From positions 186,001 to 250,000 of the IMG/VR virus record IMGVR_UViG_3300042540_001399: a stretch of DNA of 64,000 nucleotides; one strand, given 5' to 3'. The notes beneath the pieces are model-generated. The model was not told the origin of the DNA and did no database searches. It saw nothing but the letters and a program-made list of their open reading frames with translations. The position numbers were made by a program, and so were the translations under genes. Positions 38,076-56,421 of the stretch are shown in pieces (position 1 is the first letter of the stretch; every line of letters starts with the position of its first letter).

Positions 38076-38531
38076 ATGAACCGTGTATTTAGAACGGTGG
38101 AAGGGGTTTCTATACCTGATATTGTAAAACATACTATTGATATTCTTAAAGAATGTCCATATGCTGAAATACACATTGGTACAGACTCACAAAACCATAG
38201 AAGATCAACCGTGTATGTTACGGCAATAGCATATAGATATGGTAACCGTGGGGTTCACTACATTTATCATAAACAAAAAATTAAAAAAATTCGTGATAAG
38301 TGGACAAGATTATGGAATGAAGCTGATTATTCGATCGAAGTTGCAAATTGGTTGACAAATAAAATAAAGGTTCAAGTTGAAATAGACCTTGATTACAATT
38401 ATCAAGAAAAGTACTTCAGTTCGAAGTTAGTTGGTCCAGCGGTTGGGTGGGTACAATCGTTAGGTTATAAGGCAAATATAAAACCAAATAATCAAATTGC
38501 AACAAGAGCGGCAGACCACCACTGTCGTTAA
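38076..38531 (+). CDS. RNase H-like YkuK family protein
   Basis: IGTDSQ, RLWNEA, DLDYN, IKP...AADH. Confidence 0.8.
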   Translation: MNRVFRTVEGVSIPDIVKHTIDILKECPYAEIHIGTDSQNHRRSTVYVTAIAYRYGNRGVHYIYHKQKIKKIRDKWTRLWNEADYSIEVANWLTNKIKVQVEIDLDYNYQEKYFSSKLVGPAVGWVQSLGYKANIKPNNQIATRAADHHCR

Positions 38532-39446: not shown

Positions 39447-39469
39447 TATTTTATACATTTAATATTTAG

Positions 39470-39504
39470 AACCCCTCTTCCAAAAAAGAGGGGTTTTTTG
39501 TTTT
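39470..39504 (+). terminator. attenuator terminator 2
   Basis: AACCCCTCTT/AAGAGGGGTT plus T tract; boxA-like motif and tRNA-Leu follow. Confidence 0.9.
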
Positions 39505-39530: not shown

Positions 39531-39615
39531 GGTTCGGTGGTGGAATTGGCAATACACGACAGGTTTAAGCCCTGTTTCCCATTGAGGATTGTGGGTTCGA
39601 GTCCCACCCGGACTA
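39531..39615 (+). tRNA. tRNA-Leu(TAA)
   Basis: GGTTCGG/CCGGACT; ACAGG-TTTAAGC-CCTGT; variable arm. Confidence 0.93.
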
Positions 39616-39620
39616 CAACA

Positions 39621-39716: not shown

Positions 39717-39777
39717 TTTAAAAAAAACTTTACAAAGTATTTGGTAGAACAAAATAAAAAATTTAATTTTGTAATAA

Positions 39778-39894
39778 ATGAAGACAATTGAAGTTACATA
39801 TCAAGAAATCAAAATGGCAACAAGGCCAAATGTGTATAAAAATAAAAAAAAATACACAAGAAAAGAAAAACATAAAAAAGATTTGGTAGATTAA
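39778..39894 (+). CDS. small basic protein, ArfA-like motif (38 aa)
   Basis: MKTIEVTYQEIKMATRPNVYKNKKKYTRKEKHKKDLVD; TAATTTTG at 39764-39771. Confidence 0.6.
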   Translation: MKTIEVTYQEIKMATRPNVYKNKKKYTRKEKHKKDLVD

Positions 39895-39905
39895 AAAAAA
39901 TCTTA

Positions 39906-39989
39906 TATCTTTGTTAAACAAATGACGGGGGTAGGAAAATTAGTGTTGTGGATTCCTACTCCCGTGTAAAAGGGAAGAAAGTTCTTTGA
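39906..39989 (+). promoter_or_regulatory. -7 promoter, 13-bp hairpin and boxA-like motif (rrn-leader-like)
   Basis: TATCTTTG 39906-39913; ACGGGGGTAGGAA/TTCCTACTCCCGT 39925-39965; GTTCTTTGA 39981-39989. Confidence 0.6.
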
Positions 39990-40000
39990 TTTAAAATATT

Positions 40001-40081
40001 GTGGTTGTAAGCAATGGGAAACTCGTTAAGTACATCAACCAGTTGGCTCAAGATGGTGAAACGAGAGTGTGAGTCAACTAC
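40001..40081 (+). ncRNA. candidate structured RNA D
   Basis: GTGGTTG/CAACTAC, CTCGTT/AACGAG, CATC/GATG nested stems. Confidence 0.45.
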
Positions 40082-40103
40082 TAAATCACAAAAAAAATGA
40101 AAT

Positions 40104-40228
40104 AGGCAAGTGGCGGAATTTATGGCAGACGCTTAGGTTGATTCCCCGTAAGAAGTCACCGAGATATAGCTGGGGATGTCTCTTGAAAAGGGAACTATAT
40201 CGTACAGGTTCGAATCCTGTTTTGCCTA
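40104..40228 (+). ncRNA. tRNA-like RNA with expanded anticodon/variable region and pseudoknot
   Basis: AGGCAAG/TTTGCCT acceptor, Leu-type D arm, ACAGG-TTCGAAT-CCTGT T arm, ~70-nt insert. Confidence 0.75.
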
Positions 40229-40233
40229 CACAT

Positions 40234-40306
40234 CGCGGGATGTGGAAGATGGTTATCCGCTCGGTCTCATAAGCCGAGATCGCCGGTTCGAGTCCGGCTC
40301 CCGCAA
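40234..40306 (+). tRNA. initiator tRNA-fMet(CAT)
   Basis: C1:A72 mismatch, CGCGGGA/TCCCGCA; loop CTCATAA. Confidence 0.9.
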
Positions 40307-40311
40307 CTTAA

Positions 40312-43726: not shown

Positions 43727-43791
43727 AATATATTTTTTTTTATAAATATAAAGTTTTTCAAAAAGTAAATAGTTTGATAATATTTATTAAT

Positions 43792-45549
43792 ATGTCAAAA
43801 TTGTCTAAAGTATCTTTTTTTATTTCGATAGTGATTATGTCAATTTATTTTGTGACACAATCTTTACTTGTGACAGGAAACATAAGTTATAGTAAAAATA
43901 TCGGTTATGCTGGATATATATGTTTTTTACTTTTTGTATCTTTTTTTGGGATTTACATTTATGAATATTTGAAAAAAAACAAAAAAATAAAAAAAAGAAG
44001 TGATTACGTTAAAAAATTAAATGAAACATTAATATATCAATCATTAAATTCTTCTTTTTTCGAAGGTAACACGTCAGAAGGCGCTAAAGTTCTAACTAAA
44101 GAAGTCAGTAATTCAATCAATGCTGACAGATGCTCAGTTTGGTTGTACAATACAGACAGAACTTCAATTATTTGTCAACAATTGTATTCCAAAAAAACTG
44201 ACAGCTGGGAACAAAATTATGAATTATTAAAAGAAGATTATAAACCTTATTTTTTATCTCTTTTATTAAATCCTATCATAGTTGCAAATGATGCAAGAAA
44301 TCATAGTGCAACATCATGTTTTAAAGACACTTATCTTGACCCATTGGGTATTAAATCTATGCTTGATGTTCCCATTTCCTACAAGGGAGACACTATTGGG
44401 GTAATATGTATTGAAAATTTTGATTTTAGAATTTGGGACCAAGTTGAAATTGATTTTGCTCAAATGTTATCAGCATTATATTCATTTGCATATTCAATAA
44501 AAGAAAATAATAATGTTAATAAGACAATTGATGATATTGAAGGATTTATAGATCATTCGGTATTAGTAAGTAAAACGGATTCTAAGGGTAAGATAGTTTA
44601 TGTGAATAAAAAGTTTGAAGATGTTTCTGGTTGGAAACTTAGTCAGGTAATAGGAAAAGATCATAACATTGTTAATTCAGGAAAACATACCAAAAATTTT
44701 TGGAAAGACATGTATAAAACAACAGTAGAAAAAAGAAAGATTTGGAACCAAATAGTTACAAATAAAACAAAAAAAGGTGAACTTTATTGGGTTGATTCTT
44801 ATATAATGGCAGAATTTGACGAACAAGATTGTTTAAAAGGGTTTATGTCTATAAGGTATGATGTTACAGATTTGATAAAAAAAACTGAAGAAATAGCGAA
44901 GAAAAATGTTTATTTGGAACATGCCGCAAAAATATTAAGACATGATATGCATTCAGGAATTAATACTTACATACCAAGAGGGATAAGTTCGTTAGAAAGA
45001 AGATTGAGTGATAACCAAATTCAAGAATATAAATTGGAAGCCCCTTTGAAAATGTTGAAAGAAGGTCTCAAACACGCTCAGAAAGTTTATAAAGGTGTTT
45101 ATGAATTTACTAATTTAGTAAAAAAAGATTCAGTGCTCAACAAAACTAAAGTAAACTTAAAAGAAATATTAGAAAGTTACCTATCAACAACATCATATAA
45201 ATCACAAGTTGTAATTGATACTTTAGAAGACCATGAAGTTAATGAACCTTTATTTTGTACCGCCATCGATAATTTAATTAGAAATGGCCTCAAATATAAT
45301 GACAATGATAACAAATTTGTACATTTATATATGGAAGATTTTCAGTTGGTAATTCAGGATAATGGAAGGGGGCTGTCACAAGAAGAATTTGACAATTTAT
45401 CGAAACCATACGTAAGAAAAGAAAACCAAAAAGAAAGTGGTAGTGGTTTAGGTTTAAATATATGTTTAGCAATACTCAAAGAACACGGATTCAGCGTTTC
45501 TTGTGAAAAAAACCATATAGGCACTAAAATTAAAATTAAATTCAAATGA
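43792..45549 (+). CDS. sensor histidine kinase (2 TM, GAF, PAS/PAC, HisKA, HATPase)
   Basis: H box RHDMH, N box NLIRNGLKYN, G1 QDNGRG, G2 GSGLGL; PAC KTKKGELYWV. Confidence 0.92.
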   Translation: MSKLSKVSFFISIVIMSIYFVTQSLLVTGNISYSKNIGYAGYICFLLFVSFFGIYIYEYLKKNKKIKKRSDYVKKLNETLIYQSLNSSFFEGNTSEGAKVLTKEVSNSINADRCSVWLYNTDRTSIICQQLYSKKTDSWEQNYELLKEDYKPYFLSLLLNPIIVANDARNHSATSCFKDTYLDPLGIKSMLDVPISYKGDTIGVICIENFDFRIWDQVEIDFAQMLSALYSFAYSIKENNNVNKTIDDIEGFIDHSVLVSKTDSKGKIVYVNKKFEDVSGWKLSQVIGKDHNIVNSGKHTKNFWKDMYKTTVEKRKIWNQIVTNKTKKGELYWVDSYIMAEFDEQDCLKGFMSIRYDVTDLIKKTEEIAKKNVYLEHAAKILRHDMHSGINTYIPRGISSLERRLSDNQIQEYKLEAPLKMLKEGLKHAQKVYKGVYEFTNLVKKDSVLNKTKVNLKEILESYLSTTSYKSQVVIDTLEDHEVNEPLFCTAIDNLIRNGLKYNDNDNKFVHLYMEDFQLVIQDNGRGLSQEEFDNLSKPYVRKENQKESGSGLGLNICLAILKEHGFSVSCEKNHIGTKIKIKFK

Positions 45550-53479: not shown

Positions 53480-54376
53480 ATAGATTATCCGTTCAGGAAA
53501 AGTTTTGTCAGATTCTATGACAAGTAATTGGAATGAAATTTCCATCTTTGAATGATAAAGATATTGGGCCGTGTATAGTCCATAAAATAAACTACGAAAG
53601 TAGGATAAAGTGAACCCTTAAGTGTGTTGGGTTTGCGGCTTCTTCGGGAGCTTGAGTACACAAGCGGGATACCATTTTGGCTTTAGTATTGAGGGCAACG
53701 CTGTAAAGAATAAGGCAAAATGATTTGGCGATGTGGGTCGTCTGATTGAGGTGGGAACACCAATAGGAATAACCCGTAGGAATATTGCAAGACTCAAAGT
53801 CATCCAACTTTAATATTGCGTTTTCCAATATAATAGGTTACTTAAAACCAAGTGGAAGGACCACAAGGTAAGATGTAGAACGAGTGGTGTCGCTAACATC
53901 CTTCACTCAGGTTTACCAAAACCCGGTGATGAAGTAGTCTAAAAATATGGAGGTAGGGATATCTCACGGAGTAGTTGAGTATCGACTCGTTCAAAAGATG
54001 GGTTGGCTCGGTTGGCGGACCACTACTTCGACAATCCACGACACAAAACTTATGACTATTGAATTAAGTCCATTAATTAATACATTAAGGAAAAGTGTCC
54101 GTCAGGTTTGGATGAAAGGTGACTACATAGTAATGAGCCGTTCATTGCACACAGAGATCCCAAGTCGATGTGTAATTATCCGAAAAACCTTTAGTCCCGC
54201 AAGGACGAGTTGGGAAGGCATTCTCGAAAAGAGTAGATTAGGATGAGAGTAATTCAAACCTTAAGGAGTGGTAAACCTAAAAGACCGTCACTGAGAAATA
54301 CTTCTCAAAAGGAAGTGGATAAGAGTAGAAACAATAATGACTCTAAAGGTTCTCACACAAACGTGTAATCTCAGCG
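53480..54376 (+). ncRNA. large ornate ncRNA, GOLLD-like
   Basis: ~0.9 kb, visibly GC-richer than flanks, many GNRA/UUCG-type hairpins, CTGAGA/TCTCAG terminal stem, own promoter and terminator. Confidence 0.7.
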
Positions 54377-54410
54377 TTTTATTTTAATGGAGCCACCGGT
54401 AAAGAACATT

Positions 54411-55938: not shown

Positions 55939-56329
55939 TGGTGGAGGCGGAGGGACTCGAACCCTCGTCCATAATATCCTGTCAGATAAGGACTACATGT
56001 TTAGGTTGATATTTTCTAATATCCCAAAATAGTTGATTTGTTCTTCACCATCGTAAATCAACAACCAATGGTCCCGAATCGGATTTAGAGAGCCATCCGG
56101 TGTGCTCTATCAAACTACGACTTCTGTTGCTAGGTTATATGTCTGCCGACCCCCCGTTTCCGTAAACTTCTTAAGCTACAGTAACTTCAGAACCTCTTAC
56201 TAATCCAAGAGTTTCCATTTTGTTTAGCACATTGCCAGTTGTTTTCTAAGTCAGTTTTTAAAGAGATTAACTCAGTCCCTACATGCCCTTATTCTTCAGC
56301 CAATACCTGTCAAATCCAAAAACGCCCCC
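55939..56329 (-). ncRNA. ssrA: tmRNA
   Basis: 5' GGGGGCG...GGATTTGACAGG; 3' GGACGAGGGTTCGAGTCCCTCCGCCTCCACCA; G3:U70; tag ORF 56236-56171. Confidence 0.95.
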
Positions 56330-56359: not shown

Positions 56360-56421
56360 TATAAGTACAAATATAAGTACTATTTTAATTATATCCAAAT
56401 TTGGGTATATTTATTTTTAAG

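What the first reader, a model, noticed from the sequence alone, without database searches (positions are those of the whole stretch)
39778..39894. 38-aa basic peptide resembling ribosome-rescue factor ArfA
Seen: NVYKNKKKYTRKEKHK. From memory, E. coli ArfA has RVEKNKKGKGSYMRKGKH; this peptide lacks the GKGS. It is probably leaderless (TAATTTTG ends 6 nt before ATG) and lies inside tRNA array 2. With the tmRNA in this window it suggests a phage ribosome-rescue toolkit, fitting a lifestyle that copes with stalled ribosomes.
Basis: partly seen in the sequence, partly recalled or inferred. Interest (0 to 1): 0.6.

Follow-up and report, generated by a model that had tools for sequence, protein, structure and literature searches.

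The report
Phage mini-ArfA-like ribosome rescue peptide
A real, strongly conserved 38-residue phage protein whose C-terminal two thirds are homologous to the ribosome-binding part of the bacterial rescue factor ArfA, so this jumbo phage (and over a thousand relatives) probably brings its own factor for ribosomes stuck on broken mRNA; the function itself is untested.

Summary
The ORF at 39778-39894 (+) exists as described. It is a real gene: it has more than 1,300 protein clusters of relatives, found almost only on viral and metagenomic contigs, and dN/dS is about 0.15.

The ArfA resemblance is not a Lys/Arg composition effect.
- A profile of the family finds only ArfA in the whole PDB (E 0.3).
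- At most 1 of 20,000 composition-preserving shuffles of ArfA scores as well.
- A 51-aa protein of Pseudoalteromonas phage J2-1 links the two. It passes the curated cut-offs of both Pfam ArfA and DUF7230 and lacks the same GKG. It matches the family profile at 88% probability (hhalign E 3e-6).

The peptide itself fails the Pfam ArfA model. It has no KGKGS motif, and no sequence similarity to the ArfA N-terminal part that activates RF2 was detected.

Context points to translation only in some lineages: a tRNA array and a tmRNA here, SmpB directly upstream in one sister clade, and a CCA-adding enzyme once.

Best reading: a divergent, phage-specific mini-ArfA. Its basic tail, with the KH motif, would probe the empty mRNA channel of stalled ribosomes. 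Recruitment of a release factor is inferred, not shown. A short or absent leader is plausible here but is not a feature of the family.

The parts
39740..39771 (+). Promoter-like site of Bacteroidetes type (TTTG, 20-nt spacer, TAATTTTG). It ends 6 nt before the ATG. The expected transcription start is therefore at or within a few nt of the start codon, giving a leaderless or near-leaderless mRNA (inferred).
   Evidence: 13 matches in the window against 5.4 expected, with 0 of 100 shuffles reaching 13. The position of the start site relative to the -7 element rests on my own knowledge of Bacteroides and Flavobacterium promoters and was not measured.
39778..39894 (+). Gene for the 38-aa basic protein, a mini-ArfA-like member of a family related to DUF7230. 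The stop codon TAA is at 39892-39894.
   Evidence: ORF. Relatives: 71 representatives at E<=1e-3 among 1.8 billion proteins, 1,308 clusters at 90% identity and 224 viral contigs. Coding: entropy by codon position is 0.53/0.36/1.21 bits and dN/dS is about 0.15 over 60 distinct coding sequences.
39778..39822 (+). N-terminal part, residues 1-15. It is conserved within the family (I4, T7, E10) and is predicted as a short extended stretch followed by a helix at 8-15. It takes the place of the ArfA helix 15-24, but sequence similarity there is not demonstrable.
   Evidence: Alignment A1. AlphaFold2 with A1: mean pLDDT 83.5, helix 8-15. Alignment A5 with phage mini-ArfAs.
39823..39837 (+). Residues 16-20 (RPNVY), predicted to be extended. 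They align with ArfA R26-E30. In ArfA, Q27-E30 form the strand added to the beta-sheet of RF2 domains II/IV.
   Evidence: Alignments. Role of ArfA Q27-E30: review PMC8012679.
39838..39879 (+). Basic tail, residues 21-34 (KNKKKYTRKEKHKK). It aligns with the ArfA mRNA-channel tail, residues 31-47, minus the three residues GKG. The KH motif (K31-H32) is at 39868-39873.
   Evidence: K24, Y26, R28, K29 and K31 are invariant or at least 90% conserved. They fall on ArfA K34, Y39, R41, K42 and K44, which are conserved in the ArfA alignment A3. KH motif contacts with the channel: PMC8012679.
39882..39913 (+). Second Bacteroidetes-type promoter-like site. It overlaps the last codons and the stop codon of the gene and faces a structured region at 39914-40103, followed by tRNA genes.
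39531..39616 (+). tRNA-Leu(taa), the upstream neighbour. It follows an intrinsic terminator-like hairpin at 39468-39497.
40234..40307 (+). tRNA-Met(cat), the next confident gene downstream.
55939..56329 (-). Phage tmRNA gene, the other ribosome-rescue element in the window. The genome has no SmpB and no RF-1 domain gene.
   Evidence: Rfam RF00023, 114 bits, full length. No SmpB and no RF-1 domain in the 290,887-bp record.

Best explanation
The ORF encodes a divergent, phage-specific relative of the alternative ribosome-rescue factor ArfA: a 'mini-ArfA' of 38 residues.

**Shown**
- It is a real protein-coding gene under purifying selection.
- It belongs to a very large family found almost only on viral and metagenomic contigs.
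- Residues about 14-36 are related to the part of ArfA that contacts RF2 by strand addition and then fills the empty mRNA channel.

**Inferred mechanism**
- The Lys/Arg tail, with its Y-x-R-K-x-K-H core, enters the mRNA entry channel of host ribosomes stalled at the 3' end of truncated mRNAs. It fits only when the channel is empty.
- The extended RPNVY segment and the short N-terminal helix sit at the decoding centre.
- There they recruit or activate a host class-I release factor, which hydrolyses the peptidyl-tRNA without tagging the product.
- This would keep ribosomes available while mRNAs are being cut, by phage nucleases or by host defence nucleases, during infection. It would work beside the phage's tRNAs and tmRNA.

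In this phage the gene has its own Bacteroidetes-type promoter that ends 6 nt before the ATG, so the mRNA is probably leaderless or nearly so.
For: **Real gene.** 71 representatives cover residues 1-34 at 55-92% identity, and there are 1,308 clusters at 90% identity. The start Met is conserved and the stop lies 3-12 residues after KHK in 80 viral loci. Third codon positions vary most, and dN/dS is about 0.15.

**Phage-specific.** Only 2 hits, both on MAG contigs, were found in genomes of 185,579 species.

**Link to ArfA.**
- Family profile against 177,635 PDB sequences: the only hits at E<=10 are four ArfA chains.
- E. coli ArfA against all of Pfam at E<=10: only ArfA and DUF7230. 54 of 60 family members hit DUF7230.
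- Phage J2-1 protein P0310 passes the curated cut-offs of both ArfA (41.3 bits) and DUF7230 (28.6 bits) on overlapping residues, and it lacks GKG as this peptide does.
- hhalign of the family against P0310: probability 87.9%, E 3.2e-6, ungapped. BLASTP: 10 of 18 identical, E 3e-4. Against the family HMM, P0310 scores 21.8 bits, reached by 0 of 40,000 shuffles.
- ArfA against the family profile is reached by at most 1 of 20,000 shuffles.

**Conserved positions coincide.** R16, K24, Y26, R28, K29, K31 and H32 align with ArfA R26, K34, Y39, R41, K42, K44 and H45. The KH motif makes conserved channel contacts in both ArfA and BrfA (PMC8012679).

**Same layout.** The predicted order of helix, extended segment and tail matches ArfA. 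The length matches the 41-42-aa ArfA-like proteins of alphaproteobacterial phages once GKG is removed.

**Context.**
- This window has a tRNA array and a tmRNA.
- SmpB (E 2.9e-41) lies 33-260 nt upstream in 17 of 18 loci of a syntenic sister clade.
- A CCA-adding enzyme gene overlaps the 3' end of the gene in one contig.
- An ArfA of Salmonella phage Arash that passes Pfam also sits beside tRNA genes.

**Precedent.** ArfA of pelagiphage HTVC027P is transcribed during infection (PMC12753301).
Against: - The peptide and all 60 aligned relatives fail the Pfam ArfA model, even at E<=10.
- Direct family-to-ArfA statistics are weak: PDB E 0.29; hhalign probability 10.5% against enterobacterial ArfA; the reverse shuffle test gives only p about 0.002.
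- The KGKGS motif, the best conserved ArfA motif, is absent.
- ArfA residues 1-14 have no counterpart. No sequence similarity was detected to the ArfA helix that carries A18. F25, which contacts RF2, aligns with Thr.
- The link rests largely on one bridging protein.
- In most phages the gene sits among anonymous small genes.
- The SmpB link is confined to one clade. 12 more distant phage SmpB loci and 4 other SmpB-encoding phage records lack the peptide.
- The presumed hosts (Bacteroidota, judged from the promoter type) have no ArfA: 0 of 1,956 FCB-group genomes (PMC11633108). ArfA-RF2 pairs are species-specific (PMC8012679).
- There are no expression data and no binding data.
Confidence: 0.5

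Rival explanations
1. A mimic of the ArfA tail that blocks rather than rescues. The peptide occupies the empty mRNA channel and decoding centre but does not activate a release factor. It thereby keeps host tmRNA-SmpB or ArfB off stalled ribosomes, for example to prevent tagging of phage proteins, or it interferes with host translation.
For: The relationship to ArfA is shown only for the ribosome-binding half. No similarity was found to the ArfA part needed for RF2 activation (residues 1-14, A18, F25). Peptides equal to the SmpB tail inhibit trans-translation (PMC8012679). The usual location among small genes of unknown function would also fit a host-takeover factor, which is my reading rather than a test.
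Against: The N-terminal 15 residues are as strongly conserved as the tail, which suggests a specific partner rather than plain channel plugging. The gene sits directly beside a phage SmpB in one clade, and this phage has a tmRNA. That fits cooperation with rescue better than blocking it. Phage ArfA homologues that pass Pfam and have a full N-terminus exist and are expressed.
Confidence: 0.2
2. An accessory of trans-translation rather than of release factors. The peptide works with phage or host SmpB-tmRNA, for example by helping the phage tmRNA use host SmpB, or by tuning which stalled ribosomes are tagged.
For: SmpB lies 33-260 nt upstream on the same strand in 17 of 18 loci of a sister clade. 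The phage in this window has a tmRNA but no SmpB.
Against: The adjacency is confined to one lineage. It is absent next to 12 more distant phage SmpB genes and absent from 4 other SmpB-carrying phage records. Most carriers of the peptide show neither SmpB nor tRNA genes nearby. The SmpB tail and an ArfA-like tail would compete for the same channel.
Confidence: 0.1
3. A general nucleic-acid-binding basic peptide, such as an RNA, tRNA or DNA chaperone or a regulator, unrelated to ribosome rescue. On this view the likeness to ArfA is convergence on a short basic motif.
For: All direct similarity statistics to classical ArfA are below the usual significance levels. The aligned stretch is only about 23 residues and rich in Lys and Arg. 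ArfA, BrfA and ArfT are themselves thought to have converged on similar tails (PMC8012679).
Against: The shuffle controls exclude composition as the cause. No other basic protein in the PDB, ribosomal proteins and histones included, scores at E<=10. The bridging protein is Pfam ArfA over its full length. The conserved positions coincide one for one.
Confidence: 0.15
4. Not a functional protein: either a chance ORF in an A-rich spacer between tRNA genes, or a regulatory upstream ORF whose peptide sequence does not matter.
For: The region is A-rich, so Lys codons arise easily. The ORF is short and lies between two promoter-like sites.
Against: The amino-acid sequence is conserved across more than 1,300 clusters in unrelated genomic contexts. 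Synonymous variation predominates and dN/dS is about 0.15.
Confidence: 0.03

Closest known systems
ArfA (alternative ribosome-rescue factor A, Pfam PF03889) of beta- and gammaproteobacteria
   Same: Both are small basic proteins with the same order of elements: short helix, extended segment, Lys/Arg tail. The pattern R-x-x-V-x-K-N-K-K ... Y-x-R-K-x-K-H is aligned in register and includes the KH motif. ArfA is the only PDB hit of the family profile.
   Different: It is 38 aa long, against 52-55 aa for mature ArfA. It lacks ArfA residues 1-12, and the counterpart of the helix is not recognisably similar in sequence. GKG of KGKGS is missing, and Thr stands in place of F25. It fails the Pfam model. 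The ORF ends in a normal stop codon, with no arfA-like strong hairpin before it. It is carried by phages whose presumed hosts have no ArfA.
Phage-encoded ArfA homologues
   Same: These are Pseudoalteromonas phage J2-1 ATN93434.1, Salmonella phage Arash gp99c, Pseudomonas phage pf16, Citromicrobium phage RXM g10, Erythrobacter phage XM05 gp102 and pelagiphage HTVC027P gp30. All are phage-borne. Several are only 41-51 aa. J2-1 lacks GKG and has KYRRKKKHK where this peptide has KYTRKEKHK (hhalign 88%). The Arash gene sits beside tRNA genes. The RXM gene sits among small genes that include an ArdA antirestriction gene.
   Different: Those scanned against Pfam (J2-1, Arash, pf16, RXM) pass the ArfA model. 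All of them keep an ArfA-like N-terminal helix (..N-x-[IV]-x-A-x-L..P-x-F/Y-R). They infect Proteobacteria. None has been tested functionally, as far as the papers found show.
Pfam DUF7230 (PF23876), a family of unknown function
   Same: 54 of 60 family members hit it, with a best E of 2.8e-6, over positions 16-35 of both. The J2-1 ArfA passes its cut-off.
   Different: The window peptide scores 20 bits, below the 27-bit cut-off, and its N-terminal 15 residues are not matched. DUF7230 carries no functional annotation, and no paper in the library mentions it.
ArfT (Francisella) and BrfA (Bacillus)
   Same: ArfT is about 40 aa, and both have basic C-terminal tails for the mRNA channel. BrfA shares the KH motif. 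ArfT shows that a peptide of about 40 aa is enough to recruit RF1 or RF2 (PMC6299226, PMC8012679).
   Different: No sequence relationship was detected. No Pfam or PDB hit to BrfA appeared at E<=10. Both are chromosomal genes of bacteria, not phage genes.

Membership tests
ArfA (PF03889) | Match to the curated Pfam ArfA model at or above 25.5 bits | tested here: not met
   No hit even at E<=10 for the peptide, for the six-frame genome, or for any of 60 relatives. Controls pass: E. coli ArfA scores 89.5 bits and phage ArfAs score 29.6-72.2 bits.
ArfA (PF03889) | Conserved KGKGS motif in the tail | tested here: not met
   The peptide has KNKKKY where ArfA has KNKKGKGSY, so three residues are missing. 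A phage protein that passes the ArfA model (J2-1, 41.3 bits) lacks them too. According to PMC6299226 these residues are not essential for ArfA activity.
ArfA (PF03889) | KH motif and the flanking Y/F-x-R-K-x-K-H tail that binds the mRNA entry channel | tested here: met
   Y26, R28, K29, K31 and H32 align with ArfA Y39, R41, K42, K44 and H45. All but H32 are at least 90% conserved in the family, and H32 is the majority residue. This is met at the sequence level only; binding was not tested.
ArfA (PF03889) | Strand Q27-E30 and F25, which bind RF2 domains II/IV | tested here: inconclusive
   R16-P-N-V-Y20 aligns with R26-Q-R-V-E30 and is predicted to be extended. Only R and V are shared, and F25 corresponds to T15.
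ArfA (PF03889) | N-terminal region (residues 1-24, including A18) needed to activate RF2 | tested here: not met
   There is no counterpart of residues 1-12. A helix is predicted at 8-15, but no significant sequence similarity was found.
ArfA (PF03889) | Made from a non-stop mRNA (hairpin, RNase III site or terminator before the stop) and so controlled by trans-translation | tested here: not met
   The ORF ends in a normal TAA. The only structure inside it is a 7-bp A/U-rich hairpin, and there is no terminator-like site. Relatives also end in stop codons. mRNA ends were not measured.
ArfA (PF03889) | RF2-dependent release of peptidyl-tRNA on non-stop ribosomes | not testable with these tools
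   This needs biochemistry. The one complex prediction gave no verdict.
DUF7230 (PF23876) | Match at or above the 27-bit curated cut-off | tested here: not met
   20.0 bits, E 7.6e-4, residues 16-35. 54 of 60 relatives match at E<=10, with a best E of 2.8e-6. The family is therefore a close sister of DUF7230 or an under-recognised part of it.
Phage small-protein family phrog_18092 | Match to the PHROG profile | tested here: met
   E 7.2e-7, 29.9 bits, residues 9-35. The PHROG has no assigned function.

The most novel reading that the evidence does not exclude
A very large, unannotated, phage-only family of 35-42-residue proteins forms a minimal ArfA-derived module. It acts on the ribosomes of Bacteroidota, a phylum with no ArfA of its own. 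It would either recruit that phylum's RF1 or RF2 through a new N-terminal interface, or act as a phage-made plug of the mRNA channel that redirects host ribosome rescue. Either way it would be a new class of phage host-takeover factor aimed at the decoding centre, and it would give Pfam DUF7230 a function.
Probability: 0.35. Interest if true: 0.75.

Novelty: new variant of a known kind. Interest (0 to 1): 0.62.

Why it matters
Release-factor-dependent rescue factors (ArfA, BrfA, ArfT) are thought to be narrow, lineage-specific inventions that are hard to find by sequence. A recent review explicitly expects more small proteins of this kind (PMC8012679).

This work links more than 1,300 unannotated phage protein clusters, and a Pfam domain of unknown function, to the ribosome-binding half of ArfA. 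If these proteins function as proposed:
- phages would routinely supply ribosome rescue, or manipulate it, in hosts that lack ArfA;
- 38 residues without KGKGS and without the ArfA N-terminus would define a new minimal design for probing the mRNA channel;
- the co-occurrence with phage tRNA arrays, tmRNA and SmpB would support the view that large phages defend translation capacity against mRNA and tRNA cleavage during infection.

The hypothesis is directly testable with a synthetic peptide.

Tried and rejected
- **Word-index protein search and locus search with the single peptide.** I worked around this with alignments.
- **tblastn of the peptide against 50,697 GenBank phages.** No match. The low-complexity filter and the lack of cultured relatives are the likely reasons.
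- **NCBIfam.** No hit.
- **PDB search with the single sequence.** No hit.
- **Complex prediction.** I paired the peptide (with alignment A1) with RF2 of a Bacteroidota genome (L104:1609-2544). The result was no verdict, ipSAE 0.00 in two runs, and the controls were not run. This is not evidence either way. Swiss-Prot references for Bacteroidota RF2 were not held.
- **The look-up of sequencing runs.** No reads were laid, so there are no expression or transcription-start data.
- **Idea that SmpB is split and the peptide is its tail.** Rejected, because the phage SmpB matches the Pfam model to position 139 of 143.
- **Idea that the peptide is an obligate SmpB partner.** Rejected.
- **Idea that the tRNA-array location is a family trait.** Rejected.
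- **Idea that a leaderless mRNA is a family trait.** Rejected.
- **Search for DUF7230 in 301 Bacteroidota genomes.** None was over the cut-off.
- **Search for more J2-1-like bridging proteins.** The search found only J2-1 itself.
- **Diversity of the ArfA alignment.** This weakens.

Full report
**1. The observation**

- The window holds an ATG-to-TAA ORF at 39778-39894 on the plus strand.
- The window is part of a 290,887-bp IMG/VR virus record that CheckV rates 99% complete.
- The ORF lies between tRNA-Leu(taa) at 39531-39616 and tRNA-Met at 40234-40307, within a run of 22 tRNA genes.
- The motif TAATTTTG at 39764-39771 ends 6 nt before the ATG. A TTTG lies 20 nt further upstream. Together they form the Bacteroidetes-type promoter pattern. 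That pattern occurs 13 times in the window against 5.4 expected, and no shuffle of 100 reached 13.
- A tmRNA is present at 55939-56329 on the minus strand (Rfam, 114 bits). ARAGORN missed it.

**2. A real gene of a large phage family**

- An exhaustive phmmer search of 1.84 billion representative proteins gave 71 hits at E<=1e-3. They cover residues 1-34, so both the basic tail and the non-basic N-terminus are matched.
- A profile search found 1,308 clusters at 90% identity. All are named 'hypothetical'. Most are 37-41 aa long, on contigs of at most about 121 kb.
- 224 IMG/VR contigs encode a relative.
- In the 80 loci kept, the start Met is conserved and the frame closes 3-12 residues after the KHK motif.
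- Over 60 distinct coding sequences, the entropy at codon positions 1, 2 and 3 is 0.53, 0.36 and 1.21 bits. Median dN/dS is about 0.15. The protein is therefore under purifying selection, and the 'chance ORF in A-rich DNA' reading is excluded.
- A pattern scan of one genome from each of 185,579 prokaryotic species found only two relatives, both on MAG contigs. The family is thus found almost only in viral and metagenomic sequence.

**3. Relation to ArfA**

Direct tests are weak but all point the same way.
- The peptide and its relatives do not reach Pfam ArfA, even at E<=10.
- They do hit DUF7230. The peptide scores 20 bits against a 27-bit cut-off, and 54 of 60 relatives match.
- A profile of the family searched against all 177,635 distinct PDB sequences returned only four chains at E<=10, and all four are ArfA (E 0.29-0.43). 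The alignment has one three-residue gap.
- In the other direction, E. coli ArfA scanned against all of Pfam at E<=10 hits only ArfA and DUF7230.
- hhalign against an alignment of enterobacterial ArfA gave probability 10.5% and E 0.003.

- ArfA scores 14.0 bits against the family profile. That is reached by 0 of 20,000 whole-sequence shuffles and 1 of 20,000 shuffles of the tail alone.
- The reverse test, with a narrow ArfA profile, is weaker: 30 and 54 of 20,000.

**4. The bridge**

- tblastn of E. coli ArfA against 50,697 GenBank phage records showed that phages do carry ArfA homologues.
- One of them, the 51-aa protein ATN93434.1 of Pseudoalteromonas phage J2-1 (P0310), passes two curated cut-offs on overlapping residues. 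These are Pfam ArfA (41.3 bits, E 1.1e-10, profile positions 2-44) and DUF7230 (28.6 bits, E 1.5e-6).
- It lacks GKG in exactly the way this peptide does. Its tail reads KYRRKKKHK, where the window peptide has KYTRKEKHK.
- The family profile matches it without gaps at hhalign probability 87.9%, E 3.2e-6.
- BLASTP with the window peptide gives 10 of 18 identities, E 3e-4.
- Against the family HMM it scores 21.8 bits, a score reached by none of 40,000 shuffles.
- Other ArfA-like phage proteins are only 41-42 aa long and begin at the ArfA helix. Examples are Erythrobacter phage XM05 gp102 and an ORF in Roseobacter phage CRP-212. Without GKG they would have the length of the present peptide.
- I conclude that residues about 14-36 are homologous to ArfA residues about 24-47 (my estimate, about 0.8). 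I also conclude that this family and DUF7230 form a GKG-less branch of phage mini-ArfAs.

**5. What the shared part does in ArfA**

This section rests on the review PMC8012679 and on PMC6299226.
- ArfA Q27-E30 add a strand to the beta-sheet of RF2 domains II/IV.
- The tail after them lies in the empty mRNA channel.
- The KH motif makes conserved channel contacts in both ArfA and BrfA.
- The KGKGS residues help activity but are not essential.
- The family's most conserved C-terminal residues (R16, K24, Y26, R28, K29, K31, and the majority residue H32) fall on ArfA R26, K34, Y39, R41, K42, K44 and H45.
- AlphaFold2 with the family alignment (mean pLDDT 83.5) predicts a helix at 8-15, then an extended 16-22 segment, then the tail. 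This is the order seen in ArfA.
- Not shared: ArfA residues 1-14, the A18 helix sequence, and F25. ArfA needs these to activate RF2.

**6. Genomic context**

- tRNA genes accompany the gene only in close relatives of this phage. 18 of 80 loci have any tRNA within 4 kb.
- In a sister clade that is syntenic with 123.5-128.2 kb of this genome, the gene lies 33-260 nt downstream of a phage SmpB gene (Pfam E 2.9e-41). This holds in 17 of 18 loci.
- Twelve more distant phage SmpB loci lack the gene, as do four other SmpB-encoding phage records.
- In one contig the gene overlaps the start of a gene for a CCA-adding enzyme.
- Elsewhere it sits in runs of small unannotated genes on the same strand.
- The ArfA of Salmonella phage Arash, which passes the Pfam model, also sits beside tRNA genes.
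- This phage has a tmRNA but no SmpB and no release-factor gene. Any partner must therefore come from the host.
- Context supports a translation or rescue theme in three separate settings, but it is not a constant of the family.

**7. Host and promoter**

- The promoter pattern, the nearest tRNA match in a Maribacter phage, and one of the two genome hits lying in a Bacteroidales MAG all suggest a Bacteroidota host. This is inference.
- Bacteroidota and their allies have no ArfA: 0 of 1,956 FCB-group genomes (PMC11633108).
- The near-leaderless arrangement is specific to this phage. In the few other loci with an exact TAnnTTTG upstream, the motif ends 15-29 nt before the start codon.

**8. Mechanism and rivals**

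- Most likely (0.5): a rescue factor of the ArfA type. Its tail senses the empty channel, and its N-terminal part recruits a host class-I release factor.
- Rivals:
  - a channel plug that blocks host rescue (0.2);
  - a basic peptide that is merely convergent with ArfA (0.15);
  - an accessory of tmRNA-SmpB (0.1);
  - a non-functional ORF (0.03).
- No tool could test binding. The one complex prediction gave no verdict, and the tool for finding sequencing runs was unavailable.

**9. Novelty**

- Phage ArfA genes that pass the Pfam model are already mentioned in genome papers. Examples are Citromicrobium phage RXM g10 (PMC8953757) and pelagiphage HTVC027P gp30, which is transcribed early and late in infection (PMC12753301).
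- Huge phages are known to encode tmRNA, SmpB and release factors (PMC7162821).
- Two things appear new. First, a much larger GKG-less family that Pfam ArfA does not recognise, with hosts that probably lack ArfA. Second, the link from DUF7230 to ArfA. No paper in the library mentions DUF7230.
- Verdict: a new variant of a known kind. The function is untested.

Noticed in passing
window 40104-40228 (+): A 125-nt tRNA-like element lies directly before tRNA-Met. It matches the Rfam tRNA model over its full length at 27.2 bits, just under the 29-bit cut-off. ARAGORN does not call it even when introns are allowed. It may be a tRNA with an insertion or a long extra arm, or a decayed copy.
   Followed up: partly
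window 39882-40103 (+): A second Bacteroidetes-type promoter-like site overlaps the end of the peptide gene. It is followed by a 190-nt region that folds well (MFE -46.8 kcal/mol, z -3.2) and includes a 13-bp hairpin at about 39925-39965. No Rfam family matches it. It could be a small RNA or a processing spacer of the tRNA transcript.
   Followed up: partly
window 53967-54377 (+) and 55939-56329 (-): A full-length GOLLD RNA (320 bits) lies 1.6 kb from the phage tmRNA. The tmRNA has a promoter-like site at 56368-56399 on the minus strand, and the genome has no SmpB.
   Followed up: partly
window 43774-45549 (+): A 591-aa ORF with GAF, PAS and HATPase_c domains. It looks like a sensor histidine kinase, which is unusual cargo for a phage.
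   Followed up: no
window 38076-38531 (+): An ORF inside the tRNA array matches Pfam RNaseH_like (PF04308, E 6e-26). It is conserved at the same relative position in related phages (rep. L016:1369-1926).
   Followed up: partly
own genome G000:C1:126764-127869 (outside the window) compared with L036:3470-4111: In a syntenic sister clade, SmpB plus the peptide gene occupy a slot that in this phage holds a 140-aa ORF with a Nudix-box-like motif (seen by eye, not scanned) and two small ORFs. In this phage the peptide gene sits in the tRNA region instead.
   Followed up: partly
L143:2417-2641; L142:2486-2635; L144:1534-1653; L146:1489-1611: Possible annotation problems in GenBank phage records. Salmonella phage Arash gp99c, labelled 'ribosomal protein L2', is an ArfA homologue (67.8 bits). 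Pseudomonas phage pf16 and Ralstonia phage RsoM2USA have unannotated ArfA-like ORFs opposite annotated genes. Roseobacter phage CRP-212 has an ArfA-like ORF in another frame inside gp38.
   Followed up: partly
P0028, P0033, P0036 (close relatives of the window peptide): In these database entries the product starts at the internal Met13 and reads W at the position of the stop codon. These look like gene-calling artefacts, possibly from a caller that reads TGA as Trp, rather than biology. The viral loci of close relatives end in ordinary stop codons. No alternative genetic code was used here.
   Followed up: no
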